Positions 1 to 42,214 of a stretch of DNA of 43,619 nucleotides are shown in pieces. The notes beneath the pieces are model-generated. The model searched no databases and was not told the origin of the DNA. It saw nothing but the letters and a program-made list of their open reading frames with translations. The stretch comes from Salpingoeca rosetta. Lineage: Eukaryota > Protista > Choanoflagellata. Numbering within the stretch: the stretch's first letter is position 1; every line of letters begins with the position of its first letter. The stretch is taken from the NCBI GenBank assembly GCA_033442325.1, contig JAWQFM010000007.1:529968-573586 (forward strand), written 5' to 3'. Both the position numbers and the translations under genes were made by a program.

Positions 1-2010
1 ATCACCCCGGGCTCAGCCCCGTTGCCGACAACCCGCACCGTCCCCGCGCGCAAGCGTCCGCAGCCGAACCTCCCGTCCAACCCCAAGCTCCATCCGCGTC
101 AGGTCCTCAAACACAGCGCTCACAAACACAGACGCCCGCTGGCCCTCAAAGTCAAGCACGTCCCGCTCAACCACAACAGTCGCCTCCGCGCTCGACCCAG
201 GGTCATTGCCAAGCTCGCTCATGCCGCCGCTCACGCGCACCGCGCTCGCAACAACAACGTCCAGCCCAACAATCCCAACGTAGCTGTCCTGCGCCTCAAG
301 CATCGCCTCGCCGATAACGCGGGACCCGCTCACCGCGGCGCTCAATACGCGCACCACCGTCTGCCCAGCGCCAACGCCCTGCACGTGCCCAGACACAACA
401 GGGTCAACCCGTGCCACGCTCTGGTTCACAACCGCAAGCTGCGACTGCCCCAGCAGCCCGCCCAGGCTCAGCGCTGCGCTCACAGCGTCCCCGCTCCGGA
501 ACCGCCCAACAACGCTCACGCGCGCCCGCTGGAACTGGCTTGTCCCCAGCGACACGCACCCGTCAGACGCATCGTGCCCAGCGTCGCGCTGCCACCGCGC
601 CACCCGCCGCACAACGTCCCGGTCAAGCACTACCTGCACCGGCTCCTCAGGGTACCACACGCGCACCCACACCCGCGCGGACTGCCCGCCATACTCAACG
701 CTCACGCCCACAGACGGCGACCCGCCGCTCTCGGCGCCCGTCACGCGCACGCGCCCGCAGTCAGCATCCGCCAGCAACACGCTCGTGTTCAGGCTCATGC
801 ACGCCAGCCCAGGGCTCCCCGCAGACACAACTGCAAACTGCCCAGGCCGCCAGCTGCTCACAGCACGCACAGAGAGCGCAGACGTCTCCTCGCTCCCGCT
901 CAGCACAGCCGTGTTCACAAGCTCAGCGCGCGCCGCGCTCGCAACAAGCCCAACCACTCGCTCAGGCTCCACAACAACAAATCCGTTGCCGTCACGCGCA
1001 AGCCCGTCGGTAGACCCGTAAGCCCCGCCTCGCCGCACAATCACAGTTGCAGGCTCCGCTCCGCCGCCAACAAGCAGCGGCCGCCGGTCAATGTCGCTCA
1101 GGTACACAGCCCGCACAGACACAAGCGGCTGCACTGCAGCGCTCGTCCCCGCGCCGTCCCGTACCCGCACCACAACCGTCGCAACCGCCTGCTCCTCCGT
1201 TTGTGCATCCTGCGACGCTGTCTTCGGGTCCCTCAGAATGTAGCTCCCAGTCGCGTTCCGCCCATCAGCCGTCACGCCGTACTGGCCCGTCCACACATCC
1301 TCGTCAACCTCAAACCGCACAAGCTCAAGCTCGGGCCCAACAAACAGGCTCGTGCGGAACGTGTTGATCGCACGCTCCGCCTGCACACTGAGTGACACCT
1401 CAAACTCGTCGCCGCTCTTCAGTGATGCCTGCGGCACCCGCGCAATCAGCAAGCCGTTGCTTCCGCTCGGGTCAAACGCGCTCTCGGGCCGCACCAGCAG
1501 CACCTCAGACACGCGCCCCGCGTCCTGGAACCCAGCCGTCAGCGCATACTCCACGCTCACATTCAGCGCGCCGCTGCCGTCGTCCCCGCCGCCGTTCTGG
1601 CTCGCATCAACCGCCGCAGCGTCAGTCACCCACGCCTCAGGCACATCCACAGACGCAATGCACGCGCCCGTCCCGCTGTCCGTGCTGCACGTTCCACTCG
1701 GCATGCTCGTGTCAACCTCCTGCTGCAGCGTCGCCCCGCCAACAAGCCGCACATGCACCGTCGTGCTGCTCGTCCGCGTGCTCCCGCGCGCATCCCGCAC
1801 CTGCACCGCAACGTACACCCTCCGCGAGTCCGGCCACACCTCCCCGGTCAGCAGCTGCGCCTCAACGCTGCTCGCTCCAGCGCGCCCGCGCGAGTACCCC
1901 AGCGATGCAGACAGCGACGCAGCCATCGCGCCAGCGCCCTCGCCCTGGTCAAGCTCAACAGAAACAGACGTGCTCCCGCCAGGCGCCAGGCCCGCTGGGA
2001 AGCCATATCG
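1..2010. repeat. Copy 2 (partial) of a 4938-bp intragenic tandem repeat; near-identical to 4940-6948
   Basis: The same ORF translations recur at offset 4938 (411/5349, 785/5723, 1047/5985). The only differences noticed are a synonymous SNP at 1393/6331 and a 1-nt insertion near 46. Confidence 0.95.
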
Positions 2011-5000
2011 AAACGTCCCGCTCGCGTCCGTGTCGCCACTCGTCACAGGGCTGTCCAGCGAAAGCACAACCCCGCCACTCTGGCCAACGCTTGCCAGCCA
2101 TTCGTCCTCGCTCGTCGTCGGCATCGTAGCGTTGCCGCCCGCACCCGCGCCGTCGCCCACAACCGCAAACGCGCCGCTGCCCTGGGGAACAACGTCCCCG
2201 ACTATCACAGCGCTGCCCGCGGCAATCGCATAGTCCCGGCAATACGTGTTGTTCGACAGCGTGCAAACGCCATCCAGCACCTGCCCGCCAGGACACGGAA
2301 CCACAGCACACAGTCCACTCGCAAGCTTGCAGCTCACGCTGTCAACCGTGTTGTCAAACGTCTGCAGCGGGTTGTACCCTTGTGGCACAGGTGTCTTCAC
2401 AGCCACATCGTCCCCGCCAAACGCGCCAAGCGTAACACTCACCTGGCCCGTGTACGCCTTGGAGCCCTGCGTCCGTCCGCCCATAAACACAAACAGCGCT
2501 TCCGGCGTGTCGCGCGTCACCTGGATCACGCTCAGCCCAATGTCCGTGCGAACCGTCGATACAGGCACGCTCACGCGCCACAGCCCCACGCTCGCATTCA
2601 CAAGCTCAGCCTCAACAATCGCTCCGCTCAGCGTGCCAGACCCTTTGCTCAGCGTCACAAACCGGCCCTCACTGAACACAGACGCGCTCGTGCTCAGCTC
2701 AAGCCCAAGGCTGCTCTCCCCGCTTGTCAAGCCAGCAGGCACGCTGCCGCCCTCAAGGTCAAAGTACACCCGCGTATCAGCGCCAGACGCTGCGCCGTCC
2801 CCCTTATCCAGGAGCACAGCGCTCACCTCAAGCTCACACGCCGTGCCGCTGCTCACAGCCTGCACACCAACACCCGTCACAAACCGCAGCAGCCCAAAGT
2901 TGACCCGGTTCAGGAACGCCGCATCGTCCTCGTTCCGCTCCGTGTTCAGGTCCGCGTCAAGCTCATCGTACGTGTACGGCTTGCTCGCATGCAGCGCAAG
3001 CACAGCCTGCCCACGCGCAGACACAAACTTGAGCTCCTTCTCAACAAGGTACGTCAGCACAAACCGCACATCGCTCACGCCAAACACGCCGTCGCCGTTC
3101 GTGTCGCCCCGCTGAGGTGCCCCCGTGTTGCGGCGCATCCGTCGCCGCGCTTCCGCGTGCGCTTCAACGGCCTCGTCAACCGCAGTTGCCCCAAGCAAAG
3201 CGCCCTGCTTCCCGCTGCCGCTGCCGCTGCCGCTGCTGCTGCTACGGCGGCGGCGCGTGCTCGTCGCCTCAAACGGTACGCGGCCAGCAATAAACGCACG
3301 CTCAGTCCCGCTGCCAATCGCCGTCCCGCTCACATCAGGCTGGCTCAGCGTCACAACAGTCCCACTCAGCACGCTCGACCCGGCACCCACAACACGGAAC
3401 TCAAGCTCAGCAACCTCAAGCGCGCTGCCAGACACACTGTCCCCAGACACTGTCCCGCCAAACTCAACTCGCCCCGCCGTCTGCGCGTTCCGGTCAAACA
3501 GCCCGTTCACACTCGCCGTCGCAGACACAAACTCAAGCACCGTCGTATCAAACATCACCGCAAGCTCGTACGCCCCAAGCGCTGCGCCGCCAGTGTTCAC
3601 GCGCACGGGAACCGTCACCGTCTCGCCCACCCTCAGTGGGCCCACGGCAACCCCGCTCGCAGACCCAATGTCCGCATCCCCAACCTCAGGATCAAGGTTG
3701 CACGCAACACCAACCGTCCCGCGCACCGCACTCCCGCCGCTGCGCCCATCGTCAACAGTCGCCGTCAGCGTCACAACATCTGCCGCGTTGCCTTCCAGGC
3801 GAACTACCCCGCTCCGCGCTCCGATGCTCGCGCCGCTCAGGTCGCTGCTCGAAAACACAACAAGCCCGGGATACAGCGCCTGGCCCCCAGAGAACAGCGT
3901 CGGCAGCACACGCCCGCTGTCAAGCACAGCTCGCATGTCCACCGTCGTCTCCGCGCCAACGCTCCCGCGCAGCGTGCTCCCAGCTGCAACACTAACGCCC
4001 TCCAGCGCAGCCACAACCGCAGCTTCCCGCGTCACATTCACCACAAGGTCCTGCGACGCAGATGTCACGCTGCTCGCGTACTCCAGCCGCAGCTGCACAA
4101 CAAGCGATCCGCTTGTGTTCGTACCGTTCAGCACAGCGCGCCCAGCACTGCTCGTCCCCACGCTCACGTGGTTCTGTGCGGTGCCGCTGCCGCTGCCCGT
4201 CACGCGCGAGATGTCAACAACAGCCTGTCCGCTCACGTCCGACACAAGCGCCCCGCCCTCAAACAGCTGAGCCGACTCCTGTCGCACAGCAAGCGCGCCC
4301 GCCGTCGACACCTCAATCTCCTGTCCGTTGCTCAGCGCAAGATACGCCCGCACCACAAGCGCCTCGTACACCGCCGGCGTCGTCCCAGCAAGCCGGTGCA
4401 GCGTCCGAACAGACACCCCGCTCGACCCGCTGTACGCAGGGTACGGGTTCGCGTCCGCCCGCACACCAACGCCCGCAACAACCGTCACAGACACAGTCGC
4501 GCTCACGTTCTCGTGCATGAAGCTCACCCGGATCACCGCAACAGACCCGGCGCCAAGCTCCCCGGCCTTGCTCGCGTTGGCCACAAGCCGCAGCCCCGTG
4601 CTTCCGCCTTCCTCAAGCGAAACCAGGCCCATCGCCCCGCTCAGGTCAATCAGCGTCCGGTTGTCCTGCGTCGCCGTCACAACACGGTCAGGGTACTCCA
4701 GCTCAACCGTCAGCTCCGCGCTCGTCGCAACGCCAGCAGTCTCAGCCGCGTCCCCCGCAAACGTCAGCCGGCTCGCAGACACCGTCGCCCGCGCTGCATC
4801 AGCAGGTGGCAGTGCAACGCTCACATACCCGCGCCCGCGCACAACCTCAAGCACGCCGCACTCCGCGTTCGCGTTGCCGCCCTGCCAAATCGCTTCAATC
4901 AACTCCCCGCTTCCATCCACCGCGCGCCCAGGCACAACAATCACCCCGGGCTCAGCCCCGTTGCCGACAACCCGCACCGTCCCCGGCGCAAGCGTCCGCA

Positions 5001-8000
5001 GCCGAACCTCCCGTCCAACCCCAAGCTCCATCCGCGTCAGGTCCTCAAACACAGCGCTCACAAACACAGACGCCCGCTGGCCCTCAAAGTCAAGCACGTC
5101 CCGCTCAACCACAACAGTCGCCTCCGCGCTCGACCCAGGGTCATTGCCAAGCTCGCTCATGCCGCCGCTCACGCGCACCGCGCTCGCAACAACAACGTCC
5201 AGCCCAACAATCCCAACGTAGCTGTCCTGCGCCTCAAGCATCGCCTCGCCGATAACGCGGGACCCGCTCACCGCGGCGCTCAATACGCGCACCACCGTCT
5301 GCCCAGCGCCAACGCCCTGCACGTGCCCAGACACAACAGGGTCAACCCGTGCCACGCTCTGGTTCACAACCGCAAGCTGCGACTGCCCCAGCAGCCCGCC
5401 CAGGCTCAGCGCTGCGCTCACAGCGTCCCCGCTCCGGAACCGCCCAACAACGCTCACGCGCGCCCGCTGGAACTGGCTTGTCCCCAGCGACACGCACCCG
5501 TCAGACGCATCGTGCCCAGCGTCGCGCTGCCACCGCGCCACCCGCCGCACAACGTCCCGGTCAAGCACTACCTGCACCGGCTCCTCAGGGTACCACACGC
5601 GCACCCACACCCGCGCGGACTGCCCGCCATACTCAACGCTCACGCCCACAGACGGCGACCCGCCGCTCTCGGCGCCCGTCACGCGCACGCGCCCGCAGTC
5701 AGCATCCGCCAGCAACACGCTCGTGTTCAGGCTCATGCACGCCAGCCCAGGGCTCCCCGCAGACACAACTGCAAACTGCCCAGGCCGCCAGCTGCTCACA
5801 GCACGCACAGAGAGCGCAGACGTCTCCTCGCTCCCGCTCAGCACAGCCGTGTTCACAAGCTCAGCGCGCGCCGCGCTCGCAACAAGCCCAACCACTCGCT
5901 CAGGCTCCACAACAACAAATCCGTTGCCGTCACGCGCAAGCCCGTCGGTAGACCCGTAAGCCCCGCCTCGCCGCACAATCACAGTTGCAGGCTCCGCTCC
6001 GCCGCCAACAAGCAGCGGCCGCCGGTCAATGTCGCTCAGGTACACAGCCCGCACAGACACAAGCGGCTGCACTGCAGCGCTCGTCCCCGCGCCGTCCCGT
6101 ACCCGCACCACAACCGTCGCAACCGCCTGCTCCTCCGTTTGTGCATCCTGCGACGCTGTCTTCGGGTCCCTCAGAATGTAGCTCCCAGTCGCGTTCCGCC
6201 CATCAGCCGTCACGCCGTACTGGCCCGTCCACACATCCTCGTCAACCTCAAACCGCACAAGCTCAAGCTCGGGCCCAACAAACAGGCTCGTGCGGAACGT
6301 GTTGATCGCACGCTCCGCCTGCACACTGAGCGACACCTCAAACTCGTCGCCGCTCTTCAGTGATGCCTGCGGCACCCGCGCAATCAGCAAGCCGTTGCTT
6401 CCGCTCGGGTCAAACGCGCTCTCGGGCCGCACCAGCAGCACCTCAGACACGCGCCCCGCGTCCTGGAACCCAGCCGTCAGCGCATACTCCACGCTCACAT
6501 TCAGCGCGCCGCTGCCGTCGTCCCCGCCGCCGTTCTGGCTCGCATCAACCGCCGCAGCGTCAGTCACCCACGCCTCAGGCACATCCACAGACGCAATGCA
6601 CGCGCCCGTCCCGCTGTCCGTGCTGCACGTTCCACTCGGCATGCTCGTGTCAACCTCCTGCTGCAGCGTCGCCCCGCCAACAAGCCGCACATGCACCGTC
6701 GTGCTGCTCGTCCGCGTGCTCCCGCGCGCATCCCGCACCTGCACCGCAACGTACACCCTCCGCGAGTCCGGCCACACCTCCCCGGTCAGCAGCTGCGCCT
6801 CAACGCTGCTCGCTCCAGCGCGCCCGCGCGAGTACCCCAGCGATGCAGACAGCGACGCAGCCATCGCGCCAGCGCCCTCGCCCTGGTCAAGCTCAACAGA
6901 AACAGACGTGCTCCCGCCAGGCGCCAGGCCCGCTGGGAAGCCATATCGGAGCGTTCCTGTGAGTTTGCTGTGCACATCTGTGTGATTTTCTGGGCTTGTT
7001 GGAATGATGCCATTGTCTACGGTGACGTGGAAGGCGCCGATGCTTGTGCTCACGTGGACAAGAGCCGATGCGTTGTATCCGACTGTGAATAATTGTGTGT
7101 GTGAGCGTTAGCATGTGATGAGAATGTAATGACGCAAGGAGTTGTAACATCGACAGGTGTACTTGGAACATGATTTAGCAATGAAAACTCGAACATTCCC
7201 ATCTCTTCATGAGTTGTACATGCATGTGTGTGCATGTGTTTGCATGTGCGTGTTCGCATGCAAGCTCGTGCGGCTCTCACCTCTACAGGTTGTGTCGGAT
7301 GTGGGTGTGCACTCCTGATCGACGAGGAAGCCAGGCTTGCACTCAGAGCAAGGGGAGCACGTGCGTTGCTTGTGCCTTGCGACGAAGCGGAGGGCTGCGA
7401 ATGTGACTTCGTTGCCGAAGAAGTTTTCCGTGTTGATGTGCGTGTCCCTGTTCTCGATGAGGAACGTGATGGGAACGAGCGCATCTGCAGTGATGGTGCT
7501 GAGGGTGTACCAGCCTGAGGAGGGGATGGTGCGCTGGTCGATTTCCAGGCTGATGGTGCGAAAAGGTGTGGTGATGGTTATGGGGACGTTGGTTGCTGCG
7601 TTTGTCTGTGCCTTGTAGGCGATTTCAACGTCATACACGCCAGGGTCGAGCATAGCGGATGCGTTGAGGTACACGTCGCCCTTGTTCTCGTCATTGTCGG
7701 TGAGGTAGGAGGCAAAGTCACCCGCCTGTTCGTTGACGCGCACCCACGGTCCCACAGCCGTGATGTGGGTGCTGTCAATGTCCAGCGTTGTGGTTGCATT
7801 GATGGCATCTGCGGCAATGTAGAGCTCACACTGCTGGGTACGATAGGAGCCATCTGGGCACTGGGCACACAAACTCTCGCACTGGCGGTCCGAGGTTGGT
7901 GTTGGTGCCATTGTCTGTATGGTGAGGTCGTGGCAGCCCGGCAAGACTGGCCGACAGTCTCTGTCTGAAGTTGGTGTTGGAGGTGTGTGCTCGTACTCGC

Positions 8001-9697
8001 CCGATGCGCACGTCGTGAGGTTTGCGCACTGGCGGTCTGTGGTCAGGGTTGGTGCGGCAACCTCGTACTGGGCGCTAGAGCAGGACGAGAAGGCCGTACA
8101 CACGCATTCTGGCCCGATGAACTGGCCTTCGCCGCAGGTGGGCGGCTGGGTGCACGGCTGGCAGATGATGGGCAGCTTGGCGGCATCAAGGCGAAGCTCG
8201 CGAAAGGTGACTGCGCTGCCAAAGTCGATGCCAAGGTTTGAGCTGTCCCTGTTCTCGATGAGGAAGGAGGCACCGGCGTCGTCGATGTAGAAGGTGCCGA
8301 GGGTGTGGAAGCCGGATGGGTCGATGGTGGACTGGTCCACGCGGGTGGAGAAGTTACCTGTGGCGTGGGTGAAGGAAACAGGCACGCGGGTGGATGCCGT
8401 GACAGACATGGCTGCGTACGAGAAGGAGACCTTGTAGAGGCCAGGGCGCACGGTGACGTTGATGCGCAGCTCTACCAAGCCCTTGTTGTCGTTGTTGTCG
8501 CTGAGGTACTGCACGTTGTTCTGGGTGATGGTAACCCAGGGACCAGTGATGTCGAAGGTGGCGCTTGCGGTGTTGGCCAGCTCTGGCAGCGGCGGCGTGT
8601 TGTCCTGGGATGCGAGCGTCTGCGTGAGGGCGTTGGCAAGCAGCGCACCGGAGGCGCCAGTGTCATCACAAGGGTAGCGTGTTTCCGAGTTTGGCGCACA
8701 GGCGTGGCAGTAAGGTCTGCACATGGTGTTGGAAGTTGGGGTGGCGACAACGGCTTCGTATGTGTTTGTGGTGTTGCACGCTGTGACGGGTTCACAGTCG
8801 ATGTCAGTGGTGCGGGTAGCCTCCTTGCTGACGAAGAAGCCCGGATCACACTGGGACACGTTTGCGCACGCGGCATCTGAGGTGAGGGTTGGCGGCACCT
8901 TCTGGTACAAGCCCATGTCAAGGCTGCAGTCTGTGATGTTGCTGCAGACGCGGTCGGAGCTTGAGGTGCAGGGCGCGGCCACAAACTGGGTGGTGGAGCA
9001 GATGGTGCTGCACGGGGAGCAGTCTGCGTCCACGGTAGCTGCCTGGATGAAGACGCCGTCGACAAAGACAAAGCTGCCGAAGAAGTTGTCGTTGTCCAGG
9101 TGCGTGCGCTCTGTGGAGACGGTGACGTTGATGTAGGACGTGGCCCTCAAGCTGGCAGAGAGGAGTGTTCCACCGACGCCGTCTGTGAAGTTTGCGCTTG
9201 TCTGCTCGCGCTGGTCGACGTAGACGAGGGTCGTCTCTGTGCTTGCGTCGGAGGTGATTCTGACGGGCACGCGAGAAGCAGCGACGATGCTGAGCGGGTG
9301 CAGGAGAGCCACGCTGTAAGTGCCTGGGGCAAAGACGCTGACGACCATGGTGATGACTTTTGTGCCTTTGCCCATATCATCGTCGCTGTAGTAGAAGGCG
9401 CCAAGGAAGTTTGATGGCGGCTCTGGACTTGACGGCTGTGGTGAAGCGACAATGGCCCAGTTGCCGGTGATGGTTGCCGTGCTGCTGGTTGCGTCCACGA
9501 CGATGGTTGTCTCGTTGGATTGAAGGGCAGCGGCGCAAGCCTCCTGGCTCACGAACCGGCCATCCGGGCACTGGCTGCACTCGTACCCAAGCGCCACTAT
9601 TAGCGTGCAGTGTGTTGTGAGTGTATGTGTGTGTTTGGGGAGGGGGGGGGGGTTGTGGGTTGTGTTTCGTGTGTGTGTGAGTGTGTGTGTGTGGGTT

Positions 9698-9736
<39 letters not shown>

Positions 9737-10169
9737 TGTGTGTGTGTGTGTGTGTGTGTTGTGTGTGTGTTATGTGTTGTTTGTGTGTGTGGCGGGGGTG
9801 TATTGTGAGGCGTACAGGACACGTATGTGCGTGAGTGTTGTGGCTGAATCAAAATTGGCCAGCAAGCCAAGTCAATGAGGAGACACCCCCCGCTCAATGC
9901 ATCATTGGCCCACATGCGACGACGCACAGCCACAACAATTGCTCCAGCCACACAATCACGCGTGCGCGCACACACACACACACACAAACATACACAAACA
10001 CAAGCACAAACACCATCACCCCTGCACAATCACACTGTGCACACGACAGCTGACCTGGTGTGGAGGCCAGGTTGCATGCGGCGAGGATGAAGATGAAGAT
10101 GAATGCCGTGAAGGTTGGTGTGAGTGCCCGCCGATGCCTGCAGGCACGTGCCTGCCATTCGTGTGTCAT
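1..10169 (-). CDS. Giant secreted multidomain polyprotein, 3'-partial (>3100 aa in window): signal peptide, 3x golvesin/Xly CBM-like domains, TNFR-like Cys repeats, then tandem TMEM132-like/cohesin/dockerin units
   Basis: Hand-spliced, phase-consistent GT-AG exons: 10169(or 10196)-10055 (donor CCAG|GTCAGC), 9596-7281 (acceptor ATAG|, donor AGAG|GTGAGA), 7082-<1 (acceptor CACAG|). Exons 1+2 join to give a signal peptide, FTAFIFIFILAACNLASTPVALG-YECSQC. ORFs 7207..10029 and 13..7053 supply the body. The apparent stop at 13 follows a 1-nt insertion near position 46. Confidence 0.85.
2890..3108 (-). other. Dockerin (type I-like) domain
   Basis: Duplicated Ca-loop/helix motif: GDTNGDGVFGVSDVRFVLTYL ... 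DADLNTERNEDDAAFLNRVNFG. Confidence 0.75.
3270..3640 (-). other. Cohesin domain
   Basis: VGETVTVPVRVNTGGAALGAYELAVMFDTTVLEFVSA...VAELEFRVVG matches the cohesin consensus GxTVxVPVxV....(F/Y)DxxVLE(F/V)...LxFxV. Confidence 0.75.
4810..6948 (-). other. TMEM132-like ectodomain module (N region, cohesin-like domain, tandem BIG/Ig domains), repeat unit 1
   Basis: ELVNTAVLSG..LACMSLNTSVLLADADCGRVRVTGAE..VRVWYPEEPVQVVLD..VARWQ..QFQRARVSVVGRF..FEGQRASVFVSAVFED parallels the remembered metazoan TMEM132 motif order LVNTAILTG..VECxSxD..CDY..TVWVPRLPLQIEVSD..IKGW..QYQHAxVRVLTQF..QEA..WVQFSD. Confidence 0.75.
7378..9505 (-). other. Three golvesin-C/xanthan-lyase CBM-like beta-sandwich domains (~9505-9043, ~8565-8187, ~7795-7378) interleaved with TNFR-like Cys-rich repeats
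   Basis: Motif repeated three times: G(N/P)W...Y(L/Y)xDxDxxKG...PGxYxVx(L/F/I)x(Y/H)....A(S/T)xxVP(V/I)...(V/I)DQ. The spacers carry CxxxxC..PTxTSDxxC repeats. Confidence 0.7.
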
Positions 10170-19480: not shown

Positions 19481-22400
19481 TCTCTCTCACCCACCCACTC
19501 ACTCACTCACTCACTCACTCACTCACAGACTTGCGCCCACCCAAGCACATGCCTTGAGCCGTACCAGTGGACAGCGACACATTGTTGGCGACGTGGCTGC
19601 ACGTGAGATTCGTCAGTGCAAGGCTGTGCACGGGAACGCTGGTGCTGTTGCTGATGCTCAACAGCACCAGTTCAGCAACAGCGTCGAGGGCGTCGCACGA
19701 CATGTTCCCAGCACGCTCACGCGCCAGCTGTAAGGTCAGAGGCACTCGCTGAAACGACGTCCAGTTGCGTTGGCCGCAAGCCCCACACCAAGCGAGGCGT
19801 GGCCCCGATGTGTCTGAGCCCGGGGCACCATCAGACCCGGTCTCATCACCATACACGCGCAGCGTCTCTGCAGAGGCAACAAGCAAGTGCGGTGCTGTTG
19901 CTGCTGGCACGTGTGGTGGAGCTGGCACTGCTGGTGGTGGCGATGCACCACACAGGCTGCCACCGACGTTGTGCAGCGGCGGAAGCAGGGGGTGTGCGCA
20001 AACGCCCGACAATAAGGAAGGCGCATGTGCAACGCGGTACCCATCCAGCCACAGCCCAGCTCCAAAGTCTGGGCCAATGGTGACGGCAATGTGAAACCAC
20101 AGCGTTCCCACATGTGGCGCAGACGCCAGATGAAAGACGAGCGTCTGTGAGACGTGACGTGTTGGGGCTGACGTGTCTTGCAAGATAGCATCAAACAGGC
20201 TTGCTCCAACGGCTGGGGTGCGGCCGTCATGAATGCGCACTGCCTCGTGAAACACAACCCGCTTTGTTTCGACGTCCAGCGTGAGCCGCGCAGCCGTATC
20301 CCAACGCGAGCGGTTCAAGGAGGTGCAAGATCCACCGAACAGCGCCAGCTGTAACGCCCCGCTCGACGCTGTGGCCATGCCCCCAAGGACAGGAAGAATG
20401 CGGGCTGAATATGAAGGCATAGCTGGGACTTGGGTGCTTTGCACTACTGGAACAGTCACCTTCGCCCACATGCCAAATGCACGGATTGTAGCAGCGACAG
20501 CAGAAGAGGCAGCAAGCTCTGGCGTTGCGGTGAGGGCCGTGTTTGGAGATAAGACAACATACGGCTGCCCAACAGAAAACGGATTCACAGTTGACGTTGA
20601 CGCGTTCTGCAGCAGCAACGTCGTGTCAATGCGCTGCACAACCAGCGAAGACGTGTGACGTGCAATCGACGGGCCCGTCGTGCTGTCACGCGTGCTGAAC
20701 GAGCGCAGGAAAGCGGGCGCGAGGGTGCCTGCAGCCAACGGCAGCAGCTGCTCTGGTGGCACAACTTGCACACCCACAGCAGAAGACCGGGTGGGGAGCT
20801 GGACTCGTTCGTCCCCGCGTTCACCGAGTGGGACGCTCGCCCACGTTACTCTGTCCTCAAGTGCATCGTCGATGACAGCAAACGCTGCCGTGCTCAGCGG
20901 TAAGGGAGCAGTGTCCGTCCGCAGGCGCACGCACACAGCAAAGTGCTGCAACTGCGCCCGTGTCTGCACCAGCGACGCTGACGCCAAAGACACAGCACGC
21001 GCGCGTGCAACGATCCCTGATCGGGTGAAGGTGACAAACCCGCTCACGGTGGACGCAGTCAACATGGCAGCGTACGTTTCTGAGGTTGACAGCACGGCAA
21101 AGACAGCCACGCCATCACCAGCGCTCGCGGCGGTGTCAATCGACAGCGTCGTCGTTATGACCAGCGCGTGCGTGTACATTCCGCGTCCACAGCTGTGCTC
21201 AACAGCTGGCAGAGCACGCCTGCGCCGTGATGATGCCTGTGGCGCGAGCGCAATGAGCTCAGCGCCCACGATGAGCGGGCGGTCTTGTGTGATGGCGTCT
21301 GTCACATCAGCGACCACGGCCAGTGATGGGGCCTCGGTTCGCCCCTGCACCAGCGGTAGCCGTAACCCGCACATGCCAGCAAAAAACGATGGATGGAAGT
21401 GCCAGCAAAGAAACGCTGCAACATCTGCACCGTCACGCCGACAGCTGCGACCAGAGCCCGTGGTGCTGGTTGTGCTGCTGCTGCTACTACTGTTGCTACC
21501 GGTGTGCTCGTTCACGTCCAGCACGCACCGTGTCATTGTTTGCCCGCTGTCGCCAGCTTGCGATACTGCACGCCTTTGTCGTTGATGCGGCTGCTGGTGG
21601 TGGGTTTGTTGCTGTGGATTCGCAGCTGAGGACGACACCAGTCGAATTGGCAGCGAAGTCGACACGAGGTCCTGTCGAAATAAGGCAGACGCACTCATGC
21701 TGCTGCTGGTATTGTTGTCTGAATCCAGTGGTTGTGAGCGCACAATGTCCACAGATACATGCGCGGAGACTGCAGTGAATTCTGATGGTGATGGTTGTGG
21801 CTGTTCAGCACTGGCGAATGCAAGTCCCAGAACCCGAACCAGCCCCGCGCGAGGGGCAGCAGCAAGCACGAGCACGGCTTCCACTCGCCCAGCTGCGTTG
21901 CACTGTGTCATGTTCCTTGACCGATATATGAGCGGTATGCCCTCAGCCTCACCACCCGTCGCATCGCACCACCACGTATGGCGTACGGGTTGCATGCTGC
22001 CAGGTGGTACAAACACTTCAACAAGTTGAAGTGACGCTGGGTCGAAGGCTACGGAAGCCGAGTACACTGCGCCGACAGCCGCACTCAGGCTTGGCTGTTC
22101 AAACGCCAACACCATGCCTAACGTCGACGGTGGCGGTGGTGGTGGTACTGGTGCTGTTGTTGTCGGTGGTGGCGCTGTCGTTGCTGTTGTCGTTGCTGTT
22201 GTGGTTGCTGCTGGGGGCGGTGTTGTTGAAGACGACAAGACGGCGGCAGATGCAGGCCAGGGACCGAGATTGCCCCCGCCCCCACCGCCGCCAGCAGGCA
22301 CATCAGTGCCGTCACCGCTGCCGTTCATTTCTTCAGCTGCAGTTGTTCCAGGGGACAAGGGAATGGAGGTGGATGGGAGAAGCCACGTGGGACGAAAGAG

Positions 22401-23250
22401 GCGATGGGGTGCAAATACGGCAAGTGGCAGGCGGGCAAACGTGCCAACAGCACTGGGCGGTGTGGGCGACACCATCTCGTTCGCAGCGACAACAGCAATG
22501 GTGATGATCGGGTACAAGTGTGCAGAGATTGGCGGCGGCAAGCGCAGGGCTGCCGTTTGCGTGTCGCTTGAGACCAGCAAGTACATCTGATCCTCTGCCC
22601 TGTATGGGCGCAGCGCCAGCCCAAGTGCGGGCTGCAGGGCGCGGATGCTGGCAGTGATGTGCGTGCCGTCCGAGAACATAGCCGTCGCCAAGGGCAGAGG
22701 AAGCGGCTTTGGCTCTCCAACGTCAGCGACAAAGGCAAGTGTAGTGTCACCCAAGTGAGGCTGCAGGTGCACAAGTGTCGTTGGTCCTGCAATGGTGGAT
22801 GGCTCAGGAACGACCTGCACATCAGCGACAACAGCGGACGAGCTTGCGCCTGTCATGCGAACACTGATCACAACTGACTGTTGCTGCTGAAATGAGCCAC
22901 CAGTGTGGGTGAGGAGGAGCGCGTCAGGTAATGTTGACTGGGGCGATGGCGTCGATGCAGGAACAGAGGCGGTGCCGGGTGCTGTCGTTGCAGTATCCTG
23001 CGAGAGCGGCGTGGACGTGATGGAGAGAACGCTGGATGCAACGGACACATCCAAGTTGGACATGGGCAGCGCAACGCACCCTTGCTGTTGTGGGTCACAA
23101 TTGCCCGCAAGCAAGCAATCGTCATTGGCGCTGGTGTTGCTTGCGGCAACGACGCACGCGACCACACGCAAGAGCACTGGTCGTAACCGCATGTCCGGGG
23201 ATGCCTGCGGTTGTGAAGAAGGAACTGCAACCACAGGCCACTGAAACAAT

Positions 23251-23286
<36 letters not shown>

Positions 23287-25352
23287 TGAGCGAGAGGAGG
23301 GTTCAGCTGGCTGAGCGGGATGTGTGGTGGCAAGGGCAATGCCCAGGACACTGACAAGTGCGGCACGACTTGCGTGTACACGCTGTCAAGACGAGCGGAA
23401 GCCGTATGCACGCCTTCAGCTGTGTGCAGCTCAAATGTCATGGTGATGTCGCCTGCACACGGCAGCATCGCAGAAACGCGGGCAACCGTTGTTGGCGTGA
23501 TGGTCCTCGCGGCTGTGGATGAGGCGACGTGGTCCATGACGGAGGGGAATTGCTGGGGGTTGTCGGTCGTGTCCAAACCCTCGCCGTTTGCACCACTGCC
23601 CTCAAGCTCAACGTGCACTGCATCAGCGCAAGCGCCGTTTACTGCGGTGATAATGACGGAGTTGATGTTGGGAAGCGTGGCGTTTGCAAACAAGCACGTC
23701 TCCTCTTCCACCCGCACAACGTCTCGTGCCAGCGCAGGTGGTGCAACTCCGATTGTGCGCGCGGATGACTCGAGTGTCAAGTGCTGACGCAACGGAGGCG
23801 TTGGTGTGGCTGCTTGTGTGGATGCGGTTGCATTTGTGTTGATGGGGGTGGTCGTCGGTGTTGTGAAATTGGCGGCACCGCTGCTGCTGCTGCTGCTGCT
23901 GCTGTCTGCGCTTGCTGTTTGTACATAGATGGTGCGAGCTGTCAGCAGCAGTGTCTGCGCGGGATCGCTGGTGGTGCTGGTCAAGTGCACGAGCAAGCGC
24001 GCGCGGACGGTGGCACCAACATCTGCAGGTGGTGGTGGTGGTGGTGGTTGTGGTGAAGCCTCAGGGGCGATGGCGACGGCAAGCGGAAGACCCACGCTGG
24101 ACGTGGAGGGTGCCAGCACCAAATGGGGCATGGGCTCCACTGCGTCGGACACAGTCAAGGTCAAGCGAAGACGATGAGACGGCAGCAAGCGCGCCGGCTC
24201 AGCACCGACACGCGCCACCACAAACACAACATACTGCATGCGAGGCACGAGCGTTGATGTTGCCGTCGTAAGGCCGGCTGCGATGGTGGCCAGCGCGGCT
24301 GTTCGCGGCTGCTGTTGCTGCTGCTGATTGTCCTCGAGGGGGCATTCACCGTTGGATGACGATGCTCCCGGAAGCAAGCAGGCGCGAAGTGCGGCTTGCG
24401 TCGTGCCCAGTGCTGGAAAGGCAACGGCAGTGATTGTACTTGGTACTTGGGGCTGGGATGGGCGTAGTTGCAGATGCAGAGCGGCAAGTGACTGTGATTG
24501 GGAATCATTCGGTGCGGAGGGCAATGTCACCTGCACCTCAGGCGTTCCCGAGTGCTGCAGGAAAGAGTCATTGAGTGCTAGCACCGCATCGGCCCCTGTT
24601 TGCATCGTGATGGTGGCGCTGGTTGCTGGAAATATGCGCAATAACGGCAACACGTCTTCCGTGATATCACAGGGTACTGCACGGAAGCTCTCTGTGTCAG
24701 TGTCTTTGCTGCCGTCGTTGCTGTTGCTGTCATCTTTGCTGCTGTCGTTGCTGCTGTCGTTGCTGCTGCTGCTGTTGTTGTTGTTGTTGTTGCTCCTGTG
24801 GTGGCTGCTGCTGAGCTGCGGAAAAGTGGCTTCCACCCACACGGGGATCACCGGCCACACCATTTGCTGAAAATCCAACGTCTCAAGCAGTAGCGGGTGT
24901 GCTGCTGCGACTGCTGCTGCTGTCCCAGTGGTGTGGTTGCTTGCAGCGTCCATGCCACCACCGGTGGCATTGAGAGGGCTGGGTGAGGGTGTGCGGATGG
25001 CGACGTGCACGGGCTGGACAACGCGTACGGTGACGGCGGCTCGTGCCAGGTCACCTTGCAACACAGATGCAGCGACAGTGGATGAGTTGCGCACACGGAT
25101 GGTGGCGTTGATGGTGCCCCCGAACCCGACTGGAATGCGCAACTGCAAACACGACTGCGTTTCGTCTGTGTAAGTCGTGTTGCATGGTGGGGCCGACGCC
25201 ACATGCGCGCTGGTGTCGCGGCATGCTGTGATGGCACAGGAGAGCGGAATCGCTGCAGCACCGGCAGTGTCGAGATGACGCCTCAGGATTGGCAGCGACG
25301 AGTCATCGTCATCATCATCGTCATCACCAACAGCTTCATCATCATCATCATT

Positions 25353-25386
<34 letters not shown>

Positions 25387-27701
25387 GCATCAGCATCAAC
25401 AGCAGCAGCATCATCATCGTGAACAGCAGGAGCAGCATCATCTCTGTTTGTGCTGTTGGAGAGGATAATGTGCCACTGCGACTGCACATGATCAAAGGCA
25501 ACAAAACACGATGCACCGTCTGCCTCGCTCCAGATGTGAACTCGCACAGCGAGAAGGATGGGTGGATCGCTGCTCCCCGTGATGCTGCTGATGGACTGGA
25601 CGTATGGTGACCCCAGCACATGCGCGTGAAAGTGCAGTGGAACCAGTGGCTGAGTCTGTTGGCGTGCGACAAACAGCGGAGCGGAACGCGCTGCTGCGCC
25701 GCCAAGCTGTACCAGTGTTGGTGAAGCTGAACCAGCATTTGGTCTGGGTGCTGCTGCTGCTTCATGAGACAGGATATCGAGAAGGGTCACATGAGCGATG
25801 GAGAGCGGCGATGGTGGTGTTGCGGGGGAAAGGGATGACACGTTGGTGTCAATGGTGACGAACTGCACACGTTGTTGATGTGACCGCCACCGCTCAAGGT
25901 GGAGGTACAGGGTAACAGCTGGTGTTGCAGATGACAGCATGGCGGTTGCGGTGTGCGAGCACACGTCAGCGTCTGTTGTGCCTGTGATATTTTGCAGAGG
26001 GGGAGGGAGGTCGCTCATGACACGGCGCCTGCGTTGCTGCGGCGTCAAGTCTGTCCATGCAGCAACACCAAAGAAGGCGCGAAAGGCGGACGCTGCCTGG
26101 GCAACAACAGGTGACGCGCCCCAACAGCCAGCTGATGCGTGCACACGCACGAGGACAGCGCCACCTCCAGTGAGGGCCAATACGCCTGTACGTGACAGAT
26201 TGAGGCGAACAGTTATGCTGCCTCTGCCTCCTCCTGCTTCTAGTTTGCGTTGCGTCACGGCAACAACAGATGGGTGCGGTGCAGTGGCGCTGGCGGTGGA
26301 TCCAAGTACCGCTTCTGGATGGAGGAGGGCAGCCCGGATGTCCTGAGACTGCGCGCACCAGAGCTGTAGCGGTGTCACGTCCACGGTGACGTTGAGATGC
26401 ACACCAGCAATACGAGGTGATGCTGTGGGGCTGGTCGACGTGGTGGTGGTGGTGGCTGTGTACGACGGAGACGGGAGGTGAAGCGCCCAGTGCGCAGAAA
26501 ACGGCGTAAAGGCGGTTGTCGTGGCCGTGCCGACAATAGCATGTGGTGTGCATGGGGGCGCGCCGCTTTGCACCGTGAGCGAGCAGTCCACGCGCCGAGA
26601 TGATGATGATACGGGACGTGCGCGTGGCAATTGGAATGCTGGCGCACATGTTGCTCGCAGGCACGTTGTGTCGGACGTAGGATCGCATAGGACCACGGCG
26701 GGCAGCGAGGTGCTGTTTGTGAGTGCGAGGAGCGCGGGCGCAACGACGAGGCTGAATGCCAGGCGGACATGATCTTGCGACGTCTGAAGGATGCGCACGG
26801 CAGGGTCCACGAGTTGCACCTGCGCGGTGTTGCTATTGCTTTCATTCTTGGCATTGGCAGAGCTGGAAGGTGGAAGCTTGGCAAGGGTGCTTGCGAGCTG
26901 ATGGCGCTGGCGCTGTCCAACGTAAGCCAAGGGAACGTCGCCGATTGCCAGCGACACGGTGGTGGAAGAAGAAGCAGACGAAAGTGATGAAGACGAAGAC
27001 GAAGAGGACGGAAACGAAGACGAAGACGAAGGAAAGAGGGCGTCGGGGTCTGAGATGATGATGGTGGTGGGTCGAAGGGTGAGGCGATTTCCGGGAACAA
27101 AGACTGATGGGTTCGTCACCGCCATTGGGAGCCTCTTGCGCCGCTTCAAGGCGGCGAAGCGATCCTCTTTTGGTCCCGTGGAGGTCGAGGAGGAGGCCCC
27201 GGGTGTGCATGGTGCCGCTGCTGAAGGCGGTTGCGGAGAGTGTGTGGCCGAGGAGAGCAGCTCCTGGATGGAGAGCAGGTCTTGGCGAGGCCAGGTTGTG
27301 TGCAGCGTGGCAGGGAGGTATTGCAGTGTTGATTCATAGTCGCTGGTGACGCAGATGGCTGTTGAAGAGCAGAAGCCGAAGCCGGCCGACGCGGTGTGGC
27401 AGAGATCGTTCACTGGGGCGGGCCCAACAGGGGCGCAGGTGTCATCCGGCATGCACAGGCCGCGCACGCACGATCTCCATGTACACGGGGAGAAGGCAGG
27501 CCTGCCTGCGCATTGTGCTGCGGCAGAAGCTGCGCTTGCGATTGGTGATGCTGGGAGGATGGCCAGGAAGAGCAGGAGGGAGCCTACAACGTAGCCTGCT
27601 GCAACTGTGACAAACCCACCAGCAGGCACCACGGCCACCAGCACCACAGCTGTTCGCCGTTCATCGCTGCCGCTTCTTGCTCCTGTTAAGGAGCAGGCCA
27701 T
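17820..27701 (-). CDS. Very large (~3030 aa) single-pass membrane protein: diverged TMEM132-like ectodomain, cohesin-like/RxRR/dockerin-like segment, LamG-like domain, TM helix, disordered cytoplasmic tail
   Basis: Exons 27701-19565, 19181-19060, 18919-18720, 18465-17820 (GT-AG, in phase, 9105 nt). Hydrophobic N-terminal leader (YVVGSLLLFLAILPASPIASA). TM segment WVTLVLILALIIALIVAIILLA is followed after splicing by RRKKR. LWFHIAVTIG...LWLDG is LamG-like. C-terminus is ...YASTHF*. Confidence 0.75.
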
Positions 27702-28166
27702 TGAGTGAGGGCTTGAAGCGCAGGGAGGCGCTGGGTGGGTAGATTGCGTGTTTGGGTGTTTGGGTGTTTGGGTGGTTGGCTGTTGTGTTCGGTTGGTTGT
27801 GGGTGTAGAGGTTGGCGAGGTCGCGAAGCACAACAGCAGCGGTGGAGCGAGCTGCTTGCAGGCAAGCAAACAACAGCCGTGTTGAGATGCGCATTTGCGA
27901 CACCACAAACTGTGGTGAAACCAAGGGGCACAATTCGCCGCTTTGTGTGTTGTTCTCGACGACCACTGGCTGGCGCAACTCGACGACCCTCTCCAGCCCC
28001 TTGTGCTTTGTGCTTTGTTGTTGTGTGTGGTTGCAGCCACGCACTTCTGCACTTGTCACATCAAACACTGCTGTGCCACTGCTTGATAAGTGAGCATTTT
28101 TTTCCCAAAGCACCCTTCCTCTCCTCCTTCTCTCTCCCCATCTCACCACCGCTCCCACCCCTCGCG
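27702..28166. promoter_or_regulatory. Short divergent intergenic region (putative bidirectional promoter) between the TMEM132-like membrane protein and the GREB1-like gene
   Basis: Head-to-head ATGs at 27701(-) and 28167(+) with 465 bp between them. Confidence 0.45.
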
Positions 28167-34100: not shown

Positions 34101-34222
34101 TTGACATGCACAATGCCAGGGACGTGCGCGGGCTCAACTCGCTCGTGACCAATGCAGGCCCGAATGTGCAGTCAAGTTACTACTTCCACTTGGGCTGGGT
34201 CGTGGTCATGCAGCGCACATAA
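28167..34222 (+). CDS. GREB1: GREB1-like protein (~1858 aa): low-complexity N-terminus with NLS, permuted SF2 helicase, C-terminal TAGT/JGT-like GT-A glycosyltransferase
   Basis: Exons 28167-30468, 30706-31502, 31745-34222 (5577 nt, in phase). RRFLLQGKPQVGKTGAYLWAL resembles GREB1 RRLLLSGPPQIGKTGAYL. GT region: VFMPSSGRA..VIVVKQGEFDAY..HYPD..LP..GIGASRDFIK..LMLDDS..SHVYSFQLLNVDLT..Y....FEDIRFN. Helicase motifs: HDEAHW, TATP, KGRMGDTFP, EQDLGRMFRY. Confidence 0.85.
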
Positions 34223-41587: not shown

Positions 41588-42214
41588 NNNNNNNNNNNNN
41601 NNNNNNNNNNNNNNNNNNNNNNNNNNNNNNNNNNNNNNNNNNNNNNNNNNNNNNNNNNNNNNNNNNNNNNNNNNNNNNNNNNNNNNNNNNNNNNNNNNNN
41701 NNNNNNNNNNNNNNNNNNNNNNNNNNNNNNNNNNNNNNNNNNNNNNNNNNNNNNNNNNNNNNNNNNNNNNNNNNNNNNNNNNNNNNNNNNNNNNNNNNNN
41801 NNNNNNNNNNNNNNNNNNNNNNNNNNNNNNNNNNNNNNNNNNNNNNNNNNNNNNNNNNNNNNNNNNNNNNNNNNNNNNNNNNNNNNNNNNNNNNNNNNNN
41901 NNNNNNNNNNNNNNNNNNNNNNNNNNNNNNNNNNNNNNNNNNNNNNNNNNNNNNNNNNNNNNNNNNNNNNNNNNNNNNNNNNNNNNNNNNNNNNNNNNNN
42001 NNNNNNNNNNNNNNNNNNNNNNNNNNNNNNNNNNNNNNNNNNNNNNNNNNNNNNNNNNNNNNNNNNNNNNNNNNNNNNNNNNNNNNNNNNNNNNNNNNNN
42101 NNNNNNNNNNNNNNNNNNNNNNNNNNNNNNNNNNNNNNNNNNNNNNNNNNNNNNNNNNNNNNNNNNNNNNNNNNNNNNNNNNNNNNNNNNNNNNNNNNNN
42201 NNNNNNNNNNNNNN
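41588..42214. other. Assembly gap (N run)
   Basis: 627 consecutive N. Confidence 1.

What the first reader, a model, noticed from the sequence alone, without database searches (positions are those of the whole stretch)
4810..6948. Pre-metazoan TMEM132-like module used as a tandem building block
The unit carries TMEM132 hallmark motifs in order (LVNTAVLSG; C-x-S..ADC; VWYP..PVQV; QFQRARV; EGQ..V..FED; GSGEL..C..GRG). Animal TMEM132 proteins have one cohesin-like domain plus three BIG domains before a single TM helix. Here the module is extended with further BIG-like domains, a second cohesin and a dockerin, and it is multiplied. Inference: the orphan cohesin of animal TMEM132 may be a relic of an ancestral cohesin-dockerin adhesion system.
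Basis: partly seen in the sequence, partly recalled or inferred. Interest (0 to 1): 0.8.

Follow-up and report, generated by a model that had tools for sequence, protein, structure and literature searches.

The report
TMEM132-like repeat unit in choanoflagellate adhesin
The stretch encodes a real TMEM132-like domain module that, followed by a cohesin and a dockerin, forms a large repeating unit of a giant surface protein of the choanoflagellate Salpingoeca rosetta; the module's pre-animal origin was published in 2017, but its linkage to a dockerin, which I also found in sponges, was not in any paper I could read.

Summary
Observation confirmed. Window 13-7053 (minus strand), plus the exon at 7207-10029, is Salpingoeca rosetta PTSG_03507. 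Window 4810-6948 encodes a module with significant Pfam matches to TMEM132 domains 4 and 5. Paralogous units add domains 2, 3 (cohesin-like) and 6. Its predicted structure is closest to chordate TMEM132 clusters.

The module is the head of a 1646-aa unit that continues with beta-sandwich domains, a canonical cohesin, two conserved polybasic sites and a dockerin. Public reads confirm the tandem arrangement. Diverged copies of the unit occur two or three times in each of several giant S. rosetta paralogues. The unit core also matches 844 protein clusters elsewhere, including four choanoflagellate species and two sponges.

The pre-metazoan, repeated TMEM132 architecture was published by Sanchez-Pulido and Ponting in 2017, so the title claim is not new. 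An ancestral cohesin-dockerin system linked to the module is plausible. However, the dockerin's likely partner is the adjacent canonical cohesin, not the TMEM132-type cohesin-like domain.

This scan had already noted the cohesin, double site and dockerin joint on other DNA of this genome. Cleavage and binding remain untested.

The parts
7207..10029 (-). Upstream exon of the same gene (N-terminal region of PTSG_03507): three Golvesin_C-like domains interleaved with TNFR-type Cys repeats
   Evidence: Pfam Golvesin_C E=8.8e-17 and TNFR_c6 E=1.3e-17. NCBI model P0001 joins it to the ORF below.
2011..6948 (-). Complete repeat unit A (4938 nt, 1646 aa)
   Evidence: Period 4938 nt.
6424..6849 (-). 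N-terminal beta domains of the module (ORF aa about 69-210), counterpart of the TMEM132 region before the cohesin-like domain
   Evidence: Model pLDDT 80-93. phmmer finds it in 11 paralogous units. Ig_TMEM132_2nd matches 1 of 13 units, E=3.5e-4.
5890..6393 (-). TMEM132-type cohesin-like domain (ORF aa 221-388)
   Evidence: hhalign of the canonical cohesin profile against the module gives probability 94% and E=1.2e-7 on aa 226-345. Pfam TMEM132_3rd matches 2 of 13 units, E=1.3e-6. A weak PDB cohesin hit, 5aoz_A, has E=0.0068.
5584..5889 (-). Ig_TMEM132_4th domain (first BIG domain)
   Evidence: Pfam PF16070, 77.6 bits, E=7e-22.
5215..5538 (-). Ig_TMEM132_5th domain
   Evidence: Pfam PF23486, 41.4 bits, E=2e-10.
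4804..5208 (-). TMEM132 sixth-domain counterpart (ORF aa 616-750)
   Evidence: PF23487 matches 6 of 13 aligned units, best E=1.6e-8. The Atlas T132D fragment cluster aligns on model residues 490-718 with TM 0.67 by the row.
3694..4773 (-). Further beta-sandwich (BIG-like) domains (ORF aa 761-1120)
   Evidence: All-beta model with pLDDT 60-85. Segment s6a is conserved in 10 paralogous units.
3259..3693 (-). Canonical cohesin domain
   Evidence: Pfam Cohesin, 35 bits, E=1.9e-8. Conserved in 10 paralogous units.
3241..3255 (-). Polybasic site 1 (RRRR-S), directly after the cohesin
   Evidence: Invariant R-R in 9 aligned units. Present in sponge and other choanoflagellate homologues.
3130..3147 (-). 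Polybasic site 2 (RRRMRR), just before the dockerin
   Evidence: Invariant R-x-R-R column in 9 units. Present in the named homologues shown, as a dibasic KR in Corticium.
2875..3108 (-). Dockerin-like domain with two calcium-loop/helix repeats (GDTNGDG..., DADLNTERNEDD...)
   Evidence: The profile of 12 units hits solved type I dockerins: 4dh2_B E=2.3e-6 and 1ohz_B E=4.5e-4. Pfam Dockerin_1 misses this copy, but scores 37.3 bits in the Monosiga homologue and 16.9-33.6 bits at the same position in paralogues.
2011..2874 (-). Post-dockerin beta domain and Cys-rich tail of unit A
   Evidence: Conserved in orthologue P0002. The model is poor.
1..2010 (-). Head of repeat unit B, cut by the window edge
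   Evidence: Two differences from unit A in 2010 nt. The tail-to-head junction at 2010 is present in contigs of four public runs.
47..47 (-). Extra base that frameshifts unit B and creates the annotated stop at 13-15
   Evidence: The base is absent from the covering contig in all four runs laid.

Best explanation
Shown. The stretch is the head of a 1646-aa repeat unit of PTSG_03507, a giant secreted or membrane adhesion-type protein of Salpingoeca rosetta. The head is homologous, domain by domain, to the ectodomain of animal TMEM132: N-terminal beta domains, a cohesin-like domain and three BIG/Ig domains. Each unit continues with more beta-sandwich domains, a canonical cohesin, a variable linker bounded by two conserved R-x-(K/R)-R sites, a dockerin, a further beta domain and a Cys-rich tail. 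Units follow one another head to tail. There are at least two here and probably three or four. They are kept nearly identical, most likely by unequal crossing-over or gene conversion.

Inferred. The protein is a type I membrane protein, as its 66%-identical orthologue is. In the secretory pathway a furin/kexin-type convertase cuts at both sites and removes the linker. The cohesin at the end of one segment stays bound, through calcium, to the dockerin at the start of the next. The stalk would then be a chain of segments of about 1600 aa held by strong non-covalent joints. The TMEM132-like modules would be the displayed adhesive or ligand-binding parts.

Animal TMEM132 looks like one module of such a unit that kept its membrane anchor but lost the canonical cohesin and the dockerin.
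For: Identity of the gene:
- 100% match to PTSG_03507.

TMEM132 homology:
- Pfam domains 4 and 5 match in this copy. Domains 2, 3 and 6 match in aligned units.
- The model has pLDDT 80.1. Its nearest Atlas clusters are chordate TMEM132C/D/A, with TM 0.50 over 477 residues.
- The cohesin-like domain matches the canonical cohesin profile at hhalign 94%, E=1.2e-7.

Cohesin and dockerin:
-. Atlas feature neighbours are cohesin/dockerin clusters, score 0.93.

Tandem use:
- The unit order is repeated 2-3 times in giant ORFs on contigs C4, C6 and C7, with further unit parts on C24, C18 and C12, at 22-39% identity.
- An exhaustive search finds 844 clusters at E<=1e-30. Most of the best 150 match the T4-to-dockerin profile end to end, many with 2-8 stretches.

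Reality of the identical repeat:
- Junction contigs occur in four runs. A second junction variant occurs in run X12.
- DNA-run depth is 126 on the unique N-terminal side, 394 at the junction and 446 in the repeat body.
- The Tara orthologue scaffold breaks inside its first unit.
- Monosiga P0017 and metagenomic P0005 also have 100%-identical units.

Membrane anchor:
- Orthologue P0002 ends with a TM helix and a short tail. The C4 paralogue ends likewise.

Joint:
- Both polybasic sites are invariant in 9 units and are kept in two sponges and three other choanoflagellates.
- The cohesin and dockerin are the best-conserved parts of the unit.
- Four proprotein-convertase P domains occur in the genome.
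- Complex prediction gave weak support: score 0.52, best control 0.03. That mark was reached by 51 of 78 solved complexes and 2 of 108 mismatched pairs. At 0.60 or under it was reached by only 5 of those 78 solved complexes, and by all 4 mismatches that passed. The runs agree in at least 84% of contacts and the partner's pLDDT is at least 51.
Against: No experiment shows cleavage or cohesin-dockerin binding.

The complex score is in the weak band. It may also reflect the model's memory of solved bacterial complexes.

Pfam Dockerin_1 does not hit this particular copy, whose two calcium loops are about 12 aa further apart than usual.

The 3' continuation of the gene reads N for me. The unit number and the membrane anchor of the S. 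rosetta protein are therefore inferred from read depth and from an orthologue.

In the reference the second unit is frameshifted. If that is real, the protein ends there without an anchor.

The second-half model is poor, with pLDDT 55.8.

The runs labelled RNA are guesses, so expression is not shown.
Confidence: 0.6

Rival explanations
1. The near-identical tandem copy is an assembly artefact. The gene would have a single unit, and the 'multiplication' in this window would not be biological.
For: The copies differ by 2 positions in 2010 nt. Copy B carries a frameshifting extra base that no laid contig shows. Short-read assemblies collapse the repeat.
Against: The tail-to-head junction at 2010 is present in contigs of four independent runs, and two junction variants occur in run X12. 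Repeat-body depth is about 3.5 times that of the unique N-terminal contig in a DNA run. The same kind of identical repeat occurs in Monosiga and in a metagenomic homologue. Diverged tandem units exist in paralogues.
Confidence: 0.05
2. The cohesin and dockerin are structural spacer domains, and the polybasic motifs are not cleaved. They might be glycosaminoglycan-binding or simply flexible charged linkers. The protein would then work as one covalent beads-on-a-string adhesin.
For: There are no cleavage data. The complex prediction is only weak. Calcium loops of the dockerin type can be purely structural. The dockerin in this copy is atypical.
Against: Two R-x-(K/R)-R sites lie at fixed positions on either side of an otherwise unconserved linker. 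They are invariant over units that share only 22-39% identity, and are kept from choanoflagellates to sponges. The cohesin and dockerin are the most conserved parts of the unit. Convertase genes are present.
Confidence: 0.25
3. The dockerin binds the TMEM132-type cohesin-like domain, in the same or a neighbouring molecule. In that case the animal TMEM132 cohesin would be a true relic of a dockerin receptor.
For: The cohesin-like domain is homologous to cohesins. It sits in the same polypeptide as a dockerin in choanoflagellates and sponges. Each unit has two cohesin-type domains for one dockerin.
Against: It is the least conserved domain of the unit, at 21.9% against 36.2% for the canonical cohesin. 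It does not match Pfam Cohesin. The canonical cohesin is always the dockerin's immediate neighbour.
Confidence: 0.12
4. The TMEM132 likeness is only generic bacterial-Ig (BIG) similarity, not specific homology.
For: Foldseek against the PDB returns only generic Ig arrays and S-layer proteins. Big_2 gives a weak hit in the fifth domain.
Against: The TMEM132-specific Pfam models score far above their cut-offs (77.6 and 41.4 bits) while Big_2 scores 14.5. Five TMEM132-specific models match across the aligned units. The top Atlas neighbours are TMEM132 clusters.
Confidence: 0.02

Closest known systems
Animal TMEM132A-E (Sanchez-Pulido and Ponting 2017, PMC6030884; Pfam PF23481, PF23039, PF16070, PF23486, PF23487)
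   Same: It has the same ordered module: beta domains, a cohesin-like domain and three BIG/Ig domains. This is supported by specific Pfam matches and by the nearest predicted folds. Membrane topology is probably type I, as in the orthologue.
   Different: The module is not followed by the TMEM132 C-terminal region and a TM helix. It is followed instead by more beta domains, a canonical cohesin, two polybasic sites and a dockerin. It occurs several times per protein. No TMEM132_C or TMEM132D_N match was found.
[quoted passage not shown] 2012, as cited in PMC6030884)
   Same: They are pre-metazoan giant adhesion proteins in which the TMEM132 five-domain architecture is 'a repeated constituent'. 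S. rosetta paralogues on C4, C24, C23 and C18 combine the same units with cadherin repeats.
   Different: PTSG_03507 has no cadherin repeat. Its N-terminus has Golvesin_C and TNFR-Cys domains. I could not read the two primary papers, so I do not know whether they mention the dockerin or the cleavage sites.
Bacterial cellulosome cohesin-dockerin pairs (for example PDB 1ohz, 4dh2, 4fl4)
   Same: There is a Pfam cohesin, and a dockerin with two calcium-loop/helix repeats that matches solved type I dockerins by profile. The predicted pairing is weakly supported.
   Different: Both partners lie in one eukaryotic polypeptide, 40-100 aa apart, separated by convertase-type sites. In cellulosomes they lie on separate scaffoldin and enzyme proteins. 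The dockerin here has a longer inter-repeat insert and often an N-terminal Cys-rich piece.
Furin-cleaved but non-covalently held receptors (Notch S1 heterodimer), and autoproteolytic SEA and GAIN domains (from my own knowledge)
   Same: The proposed logic is the same: cut in the secretory pathway, with the two halves staying together through a dedicated interface.
   Different: The holding interface would be a cohesin-dockerin pair, and the joint would be repeated along one protein. This is an analogy only and nothing was tested.

Membership tests
TMEM132 family (animal TMEM132A-E) | Ig_TMEM132_4th domain | tested here: met
   PF16070: 77.6 bits against a cut-off of 27, E=7e-22 per copy.
TMEM132 family (animal TMEM132A-E) | Ig_TMEM132_5th domain directly after the 4th | tested here: met
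   PF23486: 41.4 bits against a cut-off of 28, at aa 506-613.
TMEM132 family (animal TMEM132A-E) | Ig_TMEM132_6th domain | tested here: inconclusive
   There is no direct Pfam hit in this copy. PF23487 matches 6 of 13 aligned units, best E=1.6e-8. The Atlas T132D fragment aligns on residues 490-718 with TM 0.67 by the row.
TMEM132 family (animal TMEM132A-E) | Cohesin-like third domain before the BIG domains | tested here: met
   hhalign against the cohesin profile gives 94% and E=1.2e-7 on aa 226-345. PF23039 matches 2 of 13 aligned units, E=1.3e-6.
TMEM132 family (animal TMEM132A-E) | One module per protein, followed by the TMEM132 C-terminal region with a single TM helix | tested here: not met
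   The module is repeated and is followed by cohesin, dockerin and other domains. No PF15706 hit was found.
Cohesin-dockerin system | Cohesin domain | tested here: met
   PF00963: 35 bits against a cut-off of 24.1.
Cohesin-dockerin system | Dockerin with duplicated calcium-binding loop-helix | tested here: met
   Both loops are visible in the sequence. The unit profile hits PDB dockerins over both repeats, E=2.3e-6. Pfam Dockerin_1 misses this copy but passes in the Monosiga homologue at 37.3 bits.
Cohesin-dockerin system | Cohesin binds dockerin, dependent on calcium | tested here: inconclusive
   Complex prediction gave weak support: 0.52 against a best control of 0.03, with the calibration counts given in the best explanation. 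Calcium dependence is not testable with these tools.
Pre-metazoan cadherins carrying the TMEM132 architecture (coherin, lefftyrin, hedgling) | Cadherin repeats | tested here: not met
   No PF00028 hit at E<=0.1 in the 2346-aa ORF, and none among the precomputed domains of P0001. Paralogues have many.
Proprotein-convertase substrates | Conserved R-x-(K/R)-R motif in an exposed linker | tested here: met
   The two sites are invariant in 9 units and kept in sponges. The linker is predicted to be disordered.
Proprotein-convertase substrates | Actual cleavage | not testable with these tools
   This needs proteomics or blots. P-domain convertase genes are present in the genome.

The most novel reading that the evidence does not exclude
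Animal TMEM132 may be the surviving stump of one unit of an ancestral polyprotein adhesin. That adhesin would have been cut by convertases and re-joined by cohesin-dockerin clasps. The system would still be complete in choanoflagellates and sponges. The TMEM132 cohesin-like domain may still recognise a dockerin-like or calcium-loop ligand in animals.
Probability: 0.25. Interest if true: 0.75.

Novelty: new member of a known kind. Interest (0 to 1): 0.45.

Why it matters
[quoted passage not shown] The 2017 paper noted that the TMEM132 cohesin has no known dockerin partner in vertebrates.

This work shows that in choanoflagellates and in two sponge classes the same module is always embedded in a unit that does carry a dockerin. 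That gives concrete recombinant domains with which to test what the TMEM132 cohesin-like domain binds.

It also points to a possible way of building very long cell-surface stalks from non-covalently joined segments. The title claim of the finding itself is already in the literature.

Tried and rejected
- **Word-index protein search.** With the 713-aa module it found nothing. With the unit alignment A5 it found only two unnamed hits. The tool's length window and word selection make these blanks uninformative.
- **Foldseek against the PDB.** It gave only generic Ig arrays, S-layer proteins and scaffoldin cohesins. The module profile found no TMEM132 chain in the PDB by sequence.
- **Second structure job** (aa 761-1690). 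It gave a poor model, pLDDT 55.8. I did not search with it.
- **DNA upstream of the window** (C7:511213-529967). It reads N, so the 3' end of the gene could not be read.
- **Papers not held.** Nichols 2012 and Peer 2009. No paper mentions PTSG_03507. No held paper links dockerin with Salpingoeca.
- **Taxonomy of hits.** Most top hits of the exhaustive search are unnamed metagenome proteins. Another gave no organism.
- **Complex test.** Only the canonical cohesin with the dockerin was tested. The TMEM132-type cohesin-like domain with the dockerin was not, because only one job was allowed.
- **Neighbouring ORF.** My module, cohesin and dockerin profiles find nothing in the 2845-aa ORF at 19515-28052.

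Full report
**What the DNA is.** The window is G000:C7:529968-573586 of a 55.4-Mb genome. The minus-strand ORF at 13-7053 is 2346 aa long. Together with the exon ORF at 7207-10029 it matches the NCBI protein PTSG_03507 of Salpingoeca rosetta (3207 aa) at 100% identity. Other genes in the window are eukaryotic: a TNFR and Golvesin region, a GREB1-like helicase with a TAGT domain, an AAA protein and a glutamate dehydrogenase.

**Check of the observation.**
- Pfam gives Ig_TMEM132_4th at E=2e-42 for the two copies together, or 7e-22 per copy. It gives Ig_TMEM132_5th at E=2e-10 per copy and Cohesin at E=1.9e-8.
- The first 350 aa of the ORF and aa 616-1100 have no direct Pfam hit.
- I aligned this module with twelve others: eleven from S. 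rosetta paralogues and one from a 66%-identical orthologue (A1). Scanning each member gave the 4th domain in 11 of 13 and the 5th in 11 of 13. The 6th matched in 6 (best 1.6e-8), the cohesin-like 3rd in 2 (1.3e-6) and the 2nd in 1 (3.5e-4).
- A profile of the canonical cohesins (A3) matches module residues 226-345 with hhalign probability 94% and E=1.2e-7.
- An AlphaFold2 model of the 725-aa module has mean pLDDT 80.1 and pTM 0.69. Its nearest clusters in the ESM Atlas are chordate TMEM132C, D and A. The best has TM 0.50 by the query over 477 aligned residues spanning 1-717. A T132D fragment reaches TM 0.67 by the row on residues 490-718.

**The rest of the unit.**
- After the module come about 360 aa predicted as beta-sandwich domains, at modest confidence. 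The Pfam cohesin follows at aa 1141-1230.
- The linker carries RRRR-S at aa 1267-1271 and RRRMRR at aa 1303-1308.
- Next is a segment with two calcium-loop and helix repeats, GDTNGDG... and DADLNTERNEDD....
- Pfam Dockerin_1 does not hit this copy. A profile of twelve such segments (A2) hits solved type I dockerins over both repeats: 4dh2_B at E=2.3e-6, and 1ohz_B, 4fl4_A and 2ccl_B below 1e-3.
- In the own-genome scan, Dockerin_1 gives hits of 16.9-33.6 bits at the equivalent position, just downstream of the cohesin, in nine ORFs. It scores 37.3 bits in the Monosiga brevicollis homologue.
- Language-model neighbours of the cohesin-to-dockerin piece are cohesin and dockerin clusters, score 0.93.

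**Is it multiplied?**
- Window 1-2010 repeats 4939-6948 with a period of 4938 nt. The only differences are an extra base at 47 and a T/C at 1393.
- The extra base shifts the frame and produces the annotated stop at 13-15.
- Contigs of four public runs of the same organism contain the tail-to-head junction at 2010. One run has two junction variants.
- All four covering contigs lack the extra base. This does not prove its absence, because contigs drop minority variants.
- In a DNA run the unique N-terminal contig has depth 126, the junction contig 394 and the repeat body 446. I read this as at least two and probably three or four units. The tool warns that such depths are no copy number.
- The DNA beyond the window start reads N for me, so I could not read the remaining units or the gene's end.
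- A Tara Oceans metagenome orthologue (P0002, locus L042) has the same N-terminal region, an intron and the start of a unit. A 100-N scaffold gap follows, then the end of a unit and one full unit. It ends with a Cys-rich piece, a TM helix and a short tail.

**Independent support for a tandem building block.**
- The S. rosetta genome has 17 places matching Ig_TMEM132_4th and 16 matching Cohesin. They lie in the order module, cohesin, dockerin inside ORFs of 2000-7600 aa.
- phmmer with segments of this unit finds the whole order two or three times in the giant ORFs on C4, C6 and C7 (2.02 Mb). It finds parts on C24, C18 and C12. Identity is 22-39%.
- Four of the paralogues (C4, C24, C23, C18) also carry cadherin repeats. 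PTSG_03507 has none.
- An exhaustive profile search with the T4-to-dockerin part of the unit (A5, 978 positions) finds 4672 cluster representatives at E<=0.001 and 844 at E<=1e-30. Most of the best 150 match end to end, and many match in 2-8 stretches.
- Named members are Monosiga brevicollis MONBRDRAFT_27653, Codosiga hollandica and Barroeca monosierra. Two sponges are also named: Corticium candelabrum XP_062511329.1 and Sycon ciliatum XP_065196373.1.
- Both sponge proteins have the cohesin, the basic sites and the dockerin.
- The Monosiga protein and the top metagenomic hit also contain 100%-identical tandem units, with periods of 1583 and 1735 aa. Homogenised units therefore recur in this family.

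**How it probably works.** The following points are shown:
- The two basic sites are invariant in nine aligned units, although the linker between them is unconserved.
- Among paralogous units the canonical cohesin (36.2% mean pairwise identity) and the dockerin (34.1%) are the best-conserved parts. The TMEM132-type cohesin-like domain is the worst, at 21.9%.
- The genome encodes proprotein-convertase P domains at four places.
- A complex prediction for the canonical cohesin with the dockerin gave weak support: score 0.52 against a best control of 0.03. That mark was reached by 51 of 78 solved complexes and 2 of 108 mismatched pairs. At 0.60 or under, it was reached by only 5 of those 78 solved complexes and by all 4 mismatches that passed. 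The runs agree in at least 84% of contacts and the partner's pLDDT is at least 51. Because like complexes are solved, the pass may be from memory.

From this I infer that convertases excise the linker and that each cohesin holds the next segment's dockerin. The result would be a membrane-anchored chain of non-covalently joined segments that display TMEM132-like modules. Cleavage, binding, expression and the anchor of the S. rosetta protein are all inferences.

**Comparison with what is known.**
- Sanchez-Pulido and Ponting (2017, PMC6030884) defined the TMEM132 architecture. They stated that all five domains occur in the same order in choanoflagellate and sponge lefftyrins, coherins and hedglings, as 'a repeated constituent' of these cadherins.
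- They also noted that no dockerin is detectable in vertebrates. The core of this finding is therefore published.
- The held literature did not contain the regular presence of a dockerin, the double basic site, or the non-cadherin member PTSG_03507. I could not read Nichols 2012 or Peer 2009.
- Pfam already calls a dockerin in the Monosiga protein, so databases hold that piece implicitly.
- Earlier notes of this scan describe the same joint of cohesin, two sites and dockerin on other DNA of this genome. My results agree with them.

The combination of TMEM132 module and cohesin-dockerin pair is old enough to have been in the ancestor of animals, because choanoflagellates and two sponge classes have it. 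However, the domain that animal TMEM132 kept is the diverged cohesin-like one. It is not the canonical cohesin that neighbours the dockerin. The 'relic of a dockerin receptor' idea remains possible but is not the simplest reading.

**Verdict.** This is a real feature. It is a new, non-cadherin member of a known kind of pre-metazoan adhesion protein. The testable extension (dockerin linkage, conserved cleavage sites, retention in sponges) gives it moderate interest.

Noticed in passing
window 47 and 13-15: The annotated C-terminus of PTSG_03507 (...LARGDGAGCRQRG) arises from one extra base in the second repeat unit. None of the four runs' contigs shows that base. The public gene model is probably truncated by a reference error or by a minority copy.
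   Followed up: partly
P0017 (Monosiga brevicollis MONBRDRAFT_27653) and P0005 (ENA metagenome): Both proteins contain 100%-identical tandem units, with periods of 1583 and 1735 aa, like the S. rosetta gene. Homogenisation of these huge coding repeats recurs in at least three organisms.
   Followed up: partly
window 19515-28052 (-): This 2845-aa ORF has no Pfam hit. It also has no match at E<=1 to my module, cohesin or dockerin profiles, although it has four R-x-R-R motifs. My profiles do not support that.
   Followed up: partly
ESM Atlas cluster, row 3: A 161-member cluster in which 68% of members carry Ig_TMEM132_4th is labelled mostly Haptophyta (phylum known for 14 members). If the labels are right, the module is not restricted to Holozoa.
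   Followed up: no
window 27735-34222 (+): There are GREB1-type circularly permuted SF2 helicase matches in two ORFs and a TET-associated glycosyltransferase (TAGT) domain. This is probably one intron-containing gene.
   Followed up: no
window 41588-42214: There is a run of 627 N (an assembly gap or a withheld stretch) inside a region of low G+C (0.40).
   Followed up: no
C7b giant ORF (G000:C7:2019845-2040376) C-terminus: The cytoplasmic tail of this paralogue contains a PDZ-like sequence (GVGFSIYGG...). The Monosiga homologue ends in ankyrin repeats. The family therefore couples the same ectodomain units to different intracellular adaptors.
   Followed up: no
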